Source: Scyliorhinus canicula (taxonomy: Eukaryota). From it: a stretch of DNA of 64,000 nt. Below are positions 9,862 through 9,919 of the stretch, in pieces. Location of the stretch: assembly GCF_902713615.1 (NCBI RefSeq), contig NC_052162.1, forward strand, positions 63,293,913 to 63,357,912, written 5' to 3'. The notes below the pieces were generated by a model. It was not told where the DNA came from. It saw only the letters and a list, made by a program, of their open reading frames with translations, and made no database searches. The position numbers were made by a program, and so were the translations under genes. Each line of letters begins with the position of its first letter. Position 1 is the stretch's first letter.

Positions 9862-9919
9862 CCGACAAGCCCCCGCCAATGATTACCACGTCTTGTTTTC
9901 CACTCGATATTTTCACCAT
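9862..9919 (-). CDS. First coding exon of a monoamine-oxidase-like flavoprotein (proximal copy)
   Basis: ATG...MVKISSGKQDVVIIGGGLS-G|GTGAGT. FAD-binding GxGxxG start with a phase-1 donor at the same position as MAOA/MAOB exon 1 ([11 protein letters not shown]|). No downstream exons found in the window. Confidence 0.7.

What the first reader, a model, noticed from the sequence alone, without database searches (positions are those of the whole stretch)
9862..9919. MAO-like gene beside BRCC3/CMC4: candidate whole-genome-duplication MAO paralogue
Seen: an ATG-initiated exon MVKISSGKQDVVIIGGGLS-G| with the same phase-1 intron position as MAOA/MAOB exon 1, co-oriented downstream of BRCC3. Known: human MAOA/B lie in the CASK-MAO-NDP-EFHC2-FUNDC1 block, whose paralogous block is MPP1-F8-FUNDC2-CMC4-BRCC3-VBP1, which has no MAO. 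Teleosts have a single mao, and MAOA/B arose by tandem duplication. Inference: this may be a 2R ohnologue of MAO retained in cartilaginous fish and lost in bony vertebrates. Only 19 codons are visible, so the family call is provisional.
Basis: partly seen in the sequence, partly recalled or inferred. Interest (0 to 1): 0.7.

Follow-up and report, generated by a model that had tools for sequence, protein, structure and literature searches.

The report
First exon of shark MAO F

Summary
The exon is real. On the minus strand, 9919..9862 reads MVKISSGKQDVVIIGGGLS-G followed by GTGAGT (phase 1). Transcript-like contigs from four studies cover 9860 to about 10100. All leave the genome at that donor and run on for 128-1107 nt. 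The next ten codons give GLSAAKVLTER. The resulting 30-residue N-terminus matches human MAO A best among solved structures (17 of 20 residues in the core).

In the window the order is CMC4 (+), then BRCC3 (-), then this exon about 20 kb downstream of BRCC3 on the same strand. In the devil ray Mobula hypostoma the annotated gene in the same position encodes a 519-residue Amino_oxidase protein.

This arrangement defines MAO F (Merello Oyarzun et al., Genome Biol Evol 2025, PMC11833248). MAO F is a paralogue of MAO A/B flanked on its 5' side by CMC4 and BRCC3 in cartilaginous and bony fish.

The whole-genome-duplication origin is not stated in that paper. It is plausible, because FUNDC1 and FUNDC2 are strict ohnologues. 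I could not fetch the rest of the protein, so I built no tree.

Verdict: already known, low interest.

The parts
9862..9919 (-). Coding part of MAO F exon 1: MVKISSGKQDVVIIGGGLS plus the first base of Gly20. It holds the beta-strand and the GxGxxG loop of the FAD dinucleotide-binding fold.
   Evidence: sequence and translation; contigs cover it; best solved-structure match is human MAO A
9920..10102 (-). 5' untranslated part of exon 1. Contig ends lie at 10056, 10082, 10084 and 10102, so the transcript start is only approximate.
   Evidence: table 8; (runs hold 59-100% of the words of 9862-10080)
9856..9861 (-). Splice donor GTGAGT, phase 1.
   Evidence: (all four contigs stop fitting at 9860; the two extra fitting bases are GT, shared by the intron and the start of exon 2)
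1..9855 (-). Start of intron 1 (longer than 9.8 kb; it runs off the left end of the window). It holds repeats and the LTR-type element at about 2384-6572. There is no further MAO exon here.
29836..51965 (-). BRCC3 (BRCC36 deubiquitinase), upstream neighbour on the same strand. The tblastn matches, whose ends are approximate, begin at 51965, 40392, 38953, 37733, 35601, 35152, 33517 and 29985.
   Evidence: tblastn with Mobula P0006: six of eight matches 98-100% identical, the other two 85% and 69%
54297..56217 (+). CMC4, head-to-head with BRCC3. Two coding pieces: 54297-54353 (MSTKDPCQKQACEIQKCLQ) and 56101-56217.

Best explanation
Window 10102..9862 (minus strand) is exon 1 of this cartilaginous fish's MAO F gene. 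MAO F is the second member of the vertebrate monoamine-oxidase family, found in non-tetrapod jawed vertebrates.

The exon supplies the start codon and the first strand and glycine loop (GGGLSG) of the FAD-binding Rossmann fold. It is spliced in phase 1 to an exon more than 9.8 kb away, outside the window, that continues with GLSAAKVLTER.

The following is inferred from the published family, not shown here. The full protein should be about 520 residues, anchored in the outer mitochondrial membrane by a C-terminal helix. It should use FAD to oxidise monoamines (tyramine, dopamine, serotonin, phenethylamine) to imines, with release of hydrogen peroxide, and should have MAO A-like properties.
For: - Sequence, donor and phase.
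- Spliced transcripts in four studies, and the exon 2 letters.
- The 30-residue N-terminus hits human MAO A first among 177,635 solved-structure sequences (E 8.5e-5). The core DVVIIGGGLSGLSAAKVLTE matches [20 protein letters not shown] at 17 of 20 positions. MAO A and MAO B entries fill much of the top of the list.
- Gene order CMC4 / BRCC3 / this exon in the window.
- The same order in Mobula hypostoma, where the third gene is annotated with a 519-residue product carrying PF01593 Amino_oxidase and PF13450 NAD_binding_8.
- The paper states that MAO F is flanked on its 5' side by CMC4 and BRCC3 in bony fish and that this side is kept in cartilaginous fish. It lists both MAO F and MAO A/B proteins for five cartilaginous species.
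- Callorhinchus BRCC36 is XP_007889520.1 and Callorhinchus MAO F is XP_007889521.1. These are consecutive accession numbers, as expected for adjacent genes.
- Enzymology and mitochondrial location of tarpon MAO F.
Against: - Only 30 residues of this species' protein were seen.
- Pfam cannot place those residues: it gives only generic Rossmann families, all below their cut-offs.
- The second-best solved-structure hit is an unrelated FAD oxidoreductase at a similar E-value.
- I could not obtain the full-length sequence, so I have no tree, no check of the covalent-FAD cysteine or the C-terminal helix, and no proof that the reading frame is intact.
- The runs are only guessed to be RNA.
- I did not show that this genome also holds MAO A/B.
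Confidence: 0.9

Rival explanations
1. It is the species' only MAO gene, that is the MAO A/B orthologue moved next to BRCC3, and not a separate paralogue.
For: Within the window nothing separates MAO F from MAO A/B. The 30-residue N-terminus resembles human MAO A closely.
Against: The paper finds both MAO A/B (beside the usual MAO neighbours) and MAO F in five cartilaginous species. It reports the BRCC3/CMC4 side as the MAO F position. The gene in the same position in Mobula follows the same order.
Confidence: 0.03
2. It is the first exon of another FAD enzyme (polyamine oxidase, L-amino-acid oxidase, protoporphyrinogen oxidase or similar) that shares only the Rossmann motif with MAO.
For: Pfam sees only generic FAD/NAD motifs. 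Several unrelated flavoenzymes score within two orders of magnitude of MAO A in the solved-structure search.
Against: The exon 2 letters give SGLSAAKVLTE against [11 protein letters not shown] in MAO A. The gene in the same position in Mobula is an Amino_oxidase of 519 residues, the size of a MAO. Published synteny puts MAO F exactly here.
Confidence: 0.03
3. The exon is transcribed, but the gene has decayed in this species into a pseudogene or a truncated transcript.
For: I did not see the coding sequence beyond residue 30. Intron 1 has taken up an LTR-type element.
Against: One contig continues 1107 nt past the donor. Contigs of at least seven studies hold the exon. The start codon, the donor and the first 30 residues are intact. 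MAO F is kept as an intact gene in five other cartilaginous species.
Confidence: 0.04

Closest known systems
MAO F (called MAO C in the preprint), Merello Oyarzun et al., Genome Biol Evol 2025, PMC11833248
   Same: A MAO-type N-terminus. Position immediately downstream of BRCC3, with CMC4 head-to-head. Host is a cartilaginous fish, a group in which the paper lists MAO F for five species.
   Different: No difference was found. Only 30 residues of this species' protein were seen, so clade membership is inferred from position and not from a tree.
MAO A/B of non-tetrapod jawed vertebrates (for example zebrafish mao) and tetrapod MAO A and MAO B
   Same: The same enzyme family and the same N-terminal FAD-binding motif. 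Human MAO A is the best solved-structure match.
   Different: Those genes lie beside GPR82/NDP, not beside BRCC3/CMC4. In the published tree the MAO F clade is sister to the whole A, B and A/B clade. Tarpon MAO F is slower than tarpon MAO A/B and is not inactivated by deprenyl.
Other flavin amine oxidases (bacterial tryptophan 2-monooxygenase IaaM, L-amino-acid oxidases, polyamine oxidases)
   Same: The Rossmann GxGxxG start and the Amino_oxidase fold.
   Different: The match is weaker and limited to the motif. A profile built on IaaM plus the 30 residues retrieved only IaaM relatives.

Membership tests
MAO F | Flanked on the 5' side by CMC4 and BRCC3 (published synteny for bony and cartilaginous fish) | tested here: met
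   Window order is CMC4 (+, 54297-56217), BRCC3 (-, 51965-29836), then exon 1 (-, 10102-9862). The definition comes from PMC11833248. Mobula has the same order.
MAO F | Groups with the MAO F clade, sister to MAO A + MAO B + MAO A/B, in a protein tree | not testable with these tools
   No full-length sequence was obtainable. The rest of the gene lies outside the window, and the protein searches failed.
MAO F | Coexists with a separate MAO A/B gene in the same genome | not tested
   Literature only: five cartilaginous species have both. The scan's notes on this genome mention no other MAO, NDP or FUNDC1.
Vertebrate monoamine oxidase (flavin amine oxidase, PF01593) | N-terminal FAD dinucleotide-binding motif continuing into the MAO-type helix (GGGxSGLSAAKxL) | tested here: met
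   The 30 residues from exon 1 plus the loose end hit human MAO A best, E 8.5e-5, with 17 of 20 core residues identical.
Vertebrate monoamine oxidase (flavin amine oxidase, PF01593) | Amino_oxidase domain over the body of the protein, about 520 residues | tested here: inconclusive
   Not visible for this species, and Pfam on the 30 residues is non-specific. The gene in the same position in Mobula has PF01593 and 519 residues.
Vertebrate monoamine oxidase (flavin amine oxidase, PF01593) | Covalent-FAD cysteine, aromatic-cage tyrosines and a C-terminal outer-mitochondrial-membrane helix | not testable with these tools
   These residues lie in exons outside the window. They are described for tarpon MAO F.
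Vertebrate monoamine oxidase (flavin amine oxidase, PF01593) | Intron 1 in phase 1 within the last Gly codon of GGGxSG, as claimed for human MAOA/MAOB | not tested
   Phase 1 at Gly20 is shown here. I did not check the human gene structure with any tool.

The most novel reading that the evidence does not exclude
MAO F and MAO A/B are ohnologues from the second vertebrate whole-genome duplication, not products of a local duplication. The block FUNDC2-CMC4-BRCC3-MAO F would then be the duplicate of the block FUNDC1-EFHC2-NDP-MAO A/B. The human X chromosome would carry both blocks, with the MAO F slot empty.

The MAO F paper dates the duplication to the jawed-vertebrate stem but never invokes genome duplication. 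No paper in the library pairs monoamine oxidase with ohnologues.
Probability: 0.6. Interest if true: 0.3.

Novelty: already known. Interest (0 to 1): 0.15.

Why it matters
It matters little as a discovery. The gene family member, its position beside BRCC3/CMC4, its distribution and the enzymology of one member were published in 2025.

Two small points remain.
- The locus shows that reasoning from synteny on 19 codons can recover a real, recently recognised gene.
That mechanism would explain why jawed vertebrates started with two MAO genes, and it could be tested with chromosome-scale shark, gar and lamprey assemblies.

Tried and rejected
Getting the rest of the protein failed by every route:
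- No exon 2 lies in window 1..9861.
- The 37-residue stop-to-stop piece is too short for the search for homologous proteins.
- The same piece found only two unrelated repeat proteins in the representative library.
- The 30 residues padded with X to 40 found nothing among short proteins.
- Aligning the peptide to a long unrelated window ORF scattered it, so I did not use that alignment (A1).
- Aligning it to the Ti-plasmid tryptophan 2-monooxygenase as a homologous carrier (A2) returned only IaaM relatives.
- tblastn against plasmids gave only generic FAD oxidoreductases.
- Two guessed accession numbers for the nicotine plasmid were not in the collection.

Cross-species DNA did not help either:
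- The Polypterus (L001) and Arapaima (L005) loci show FUNDC2-(CMC4)-BRCC3 but no Rossmann-type exon within 10 kb downstream. This is inconclusive and does not show loss.
- The Mobula locus came without DNA.
- Callorhinchus and Chelonia BRCC3 products were not on record.
- The Channa hit is an intronless BRCC3 copy among TRIM genes and says nothing about synteny.

Other dead ends:
- FUNDC2 was not found in the window. The only tblastx hits were a shared repeat.
- The scan's notes on this genome hold nothing on a second MAO, NDP or FUNDC1.
- Pfam on the 30 residues cannot name a family.

Full report
**Observation.** The feature lies on the minus strand. Read from 9919 down to 9862, the sequence is ATG GTG AAA ATA TCG AGT GGA AAA CAA GAC GTG GTA ATC ATT GGC GGG GGC TTG TCG G, followed by GTGAGT. 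An in-frame TAA sits two codons upstream of the ATG. The ATG has G at -3 and G at +4.

**Expression and splicing.** About sixteen runs guessed to be RNA hold only 6-13% of the sampled words of 9000-11000. The same runs hold 59-100% of the words of 9862-10080. This is the pattern of an exon and not of genomic DNA.

I laid the contigs of four such runs from four studies on 6600-11600. Each run has one contig lying on 9860 up to 10056, 10082, 10084 or 10102. Each contig stops fitting the genome at 9860 and then continues for 196, 128, 208 and 1107 letters respectively. The thirty loose letters of the X6 contig read, on the mRNA strand, CTG TCC GCT GCC AAA GTC TTA ACA GAG AGG. The two bases 9861-9860 (GT) fit both the intron start and the start of exon 2. 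The canonical reading is therefore exon 1 ending at 9862.

The message continues G-GT CTG TCC and so on, which gives MVKISSGKQDVVIIGGGLSGLSAAKVLTER. The runs are only guessed to be RNA. A break exactly at a GT donor followed by in-frame codons is nonetheless what a spliced transcript gives. No candidate second exon exists in window 1..9861 on this strand. Intron 1 is therefore longer than 9.8 kb and the rest of the gene lies to the left of the window.

**Family.**
- The 30 residues searched against all solved-structure sequences hit human MAO A first (2bxr, E 8.5e-5). The core DVVIIGGGLSGLSAAKVLTE aligns to [20 protein letters not shown] with 17 of 20 positions identical.
- Rat MAO A and many MAO B entries follow.
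- The result is only suggestive. An unrelated FAD oxidoreductase scores nearly as well.
- Pfam sees only generic dinucleotide-binding families, all below their cut-offs.

**Neighbours.**
- A tblastn of ray and chimaera BRCC3 proteins, obtained, maps eight BRCC3 coding exons on the minus strand from 51965 to 29836. Six of the eight matches are 98-100% identical to Mobula hypostoma; the other two are 85% and 69%.
- CMC4 lies head-to-head with BRCC3 on the plus strand, at 54297-54353 and 56101-56217.
- The MAO-like exon is co-oriented with BRCC3, about 20 kb past its stop codon.
- The best BRCC3 matches (Mobula, Callorhinchus) agree with a cartilaginous fish as source.

**The same position in another species.** I looked up the Mobula BRCC3 product in its annotated genome. 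The order there is CMC4 (59 residues, opposite strand), BRCC3 (277 residues), and 8.5 kb further on the same strand a gene whose 519-residue product carries PF01593 Amino_oxidase and PF13450 NAD_binding_8.

**Literature.** A search for monoamine oxidase, cartilaginous and paralog found Merello Oyarzun et al., Genome Biol Evol 2025 (PMC11833248; the preprint called the gene MAO C). The paper reports the following.
[quoted passage not shown] Its clade is strongly supported and is sister to MAO A + MAO B + MAO A/B.
- In bony fish it is flanked at the 5' side by CMC4 and BRCC3 and at the 3' side by GABRA3 and GABRB4. In cartilaginous fish the 5' side is kept.
- Non-tetrapods also have a single MAO A/B beside the usual MAO neighbours.
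- The lamprey has one gene, sister to all of these.

Table S1 lists MAO F and MAO A/B proteins for Chiloscyllium, Stegostoma, Scyliorhinus, Amblyraja and Callorhinchus. It also lists MAO F for gar, sturgeon, reedfish, eel, arowana, elephantfish and tarpon. The Callorhinchus MAO F accession (XP_007889521.1) directly follows the Callorhinchus BRCC36 accession seen (XP_007889520.1). That fits adjacent genes.

**How it most likely works.**
- Shown here: the exon provides the start codon and the first strand and glycine loop of the FAD-binding fold, and it is spliced to an exon that continues the MAO-type helix.
- Inferred from the family: tarpon MAO F binds FAD and localises to mitochondria. It oxidises tyramine, dopamine, serotonin, phenethylamine and kynuramine at rates like those of the human enzymes. 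It is inactivated by clorgyline but not by deprenyl, and its active site is closer to human MAO A.
- I expect the shark protein to do the same. I saw none of its catalytic residues.

- Correct: it is a MAO gene; it is a second paralogue and not the MAO A/B gene; it dates to early vertebrates; the human BRCC3 block has no MAO.
- Incorrect: that it was lost in bony vertebrates and that teleosts as a whole have one mao.
- Open: the 2R origin. The paper never mentions genome duplication, and no paper in the library links monoamine oxidase and ohnologues. FUNDC1, near MAO A/B in human, and FUNDC2, next to CMC4-BRCC3, are strict ohnologues lying in paired blocks with nine shared gene pairs (PMC5526904). 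I saw the order FUNDC2-CMC4-BRCC3 in Arapaima, and FUNDC2 directly upstream of BRCC3 in Polypterus. A duplication after the lamprey split fits a jawed-vertebrate genome duplication. That last step rests on general knowledge and was not tested here.

**Limits.**
- I could not obtain the full-length protein, so there is no tree. There is also no check of catalytic residues and no proof that the frame is intact.
- The presence of MAO A/B in this very genome rests on the literature for related species.
- The intron-position comparison with human MAOA/MAOB was not tested.

**Verdict.** The feature is exon 1 of MAO F, an already described gene at its described position. Only the genome-duplication reading goes beyond the published account, and it remains an inference.

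Noticed in passing
window 9920-10102, minus strand: The 5' untranslated part of exon 1 holds upstream ATGs. One example is ATG TCT GTG TCA ... TGA, about 18 codons, starting near 10093. It would be a short upstream reading frame if transcripts really start at about 10102. A TATA-like GATAAAAG lies at about 10100.
   Followed up: no
window 10420-10713 and 8604-8937: Two short stretches reach summed contig depths of about 7,000 to 230,000 (first) and up to 13,000 (second) in the RNA-type runs that cover them, with many contigs running on into unrelated sequence. They are most likely SINE-type repeats carried inside many transcripts. They do not belong to the MAO F exon.
   Followed up: partly
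window 3251-5863, plus strand: An 871-codon stretch without stops lies inside MAO F intron 1, antisense to the gene. It overlaps the LTR-type element noted earlier (s1-203734).
   Followed up: no
window 10103-29835: The gap between the BRCC3 stop codon and the MAO F start is about 20 kb here, against 8.5 kb from the annotated BRCC3 gene end in Mobula. In the window it is filled largely with LINE-type reading frames.
   Followed up: no
window 52856-52925, 19710-19781, 30403-30453; L001 1361-1432: A short element of about 70 bases is shared between the shark window (three copies) and an intron of Polypterus FUNDC2 at 58-81% amino-acid identity in tblastx pieces. It looks like an old conserved SINE core.
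   Followed up: no
L006 10001-10782 (Channa striata): A BRCC3-like gene of 246 residues is called in 782 bases, so it has no introns. It sits between TRIM genes and is probably a retrocopy rather than the syntenic BRCC3.
   Followed up: no
P0006 residues 105-120 (Mobula BRCC3 isoform X1): This isoform carries 16 extra residues (GYHGCNQKHRGPWHPE) between the exon ending PSHV and the exon starting DVRTQ. The window and the Callorhinchus protein have no counterpart. It looks like an alternative donor or retained sequence in the annotation.
   Followed up: no
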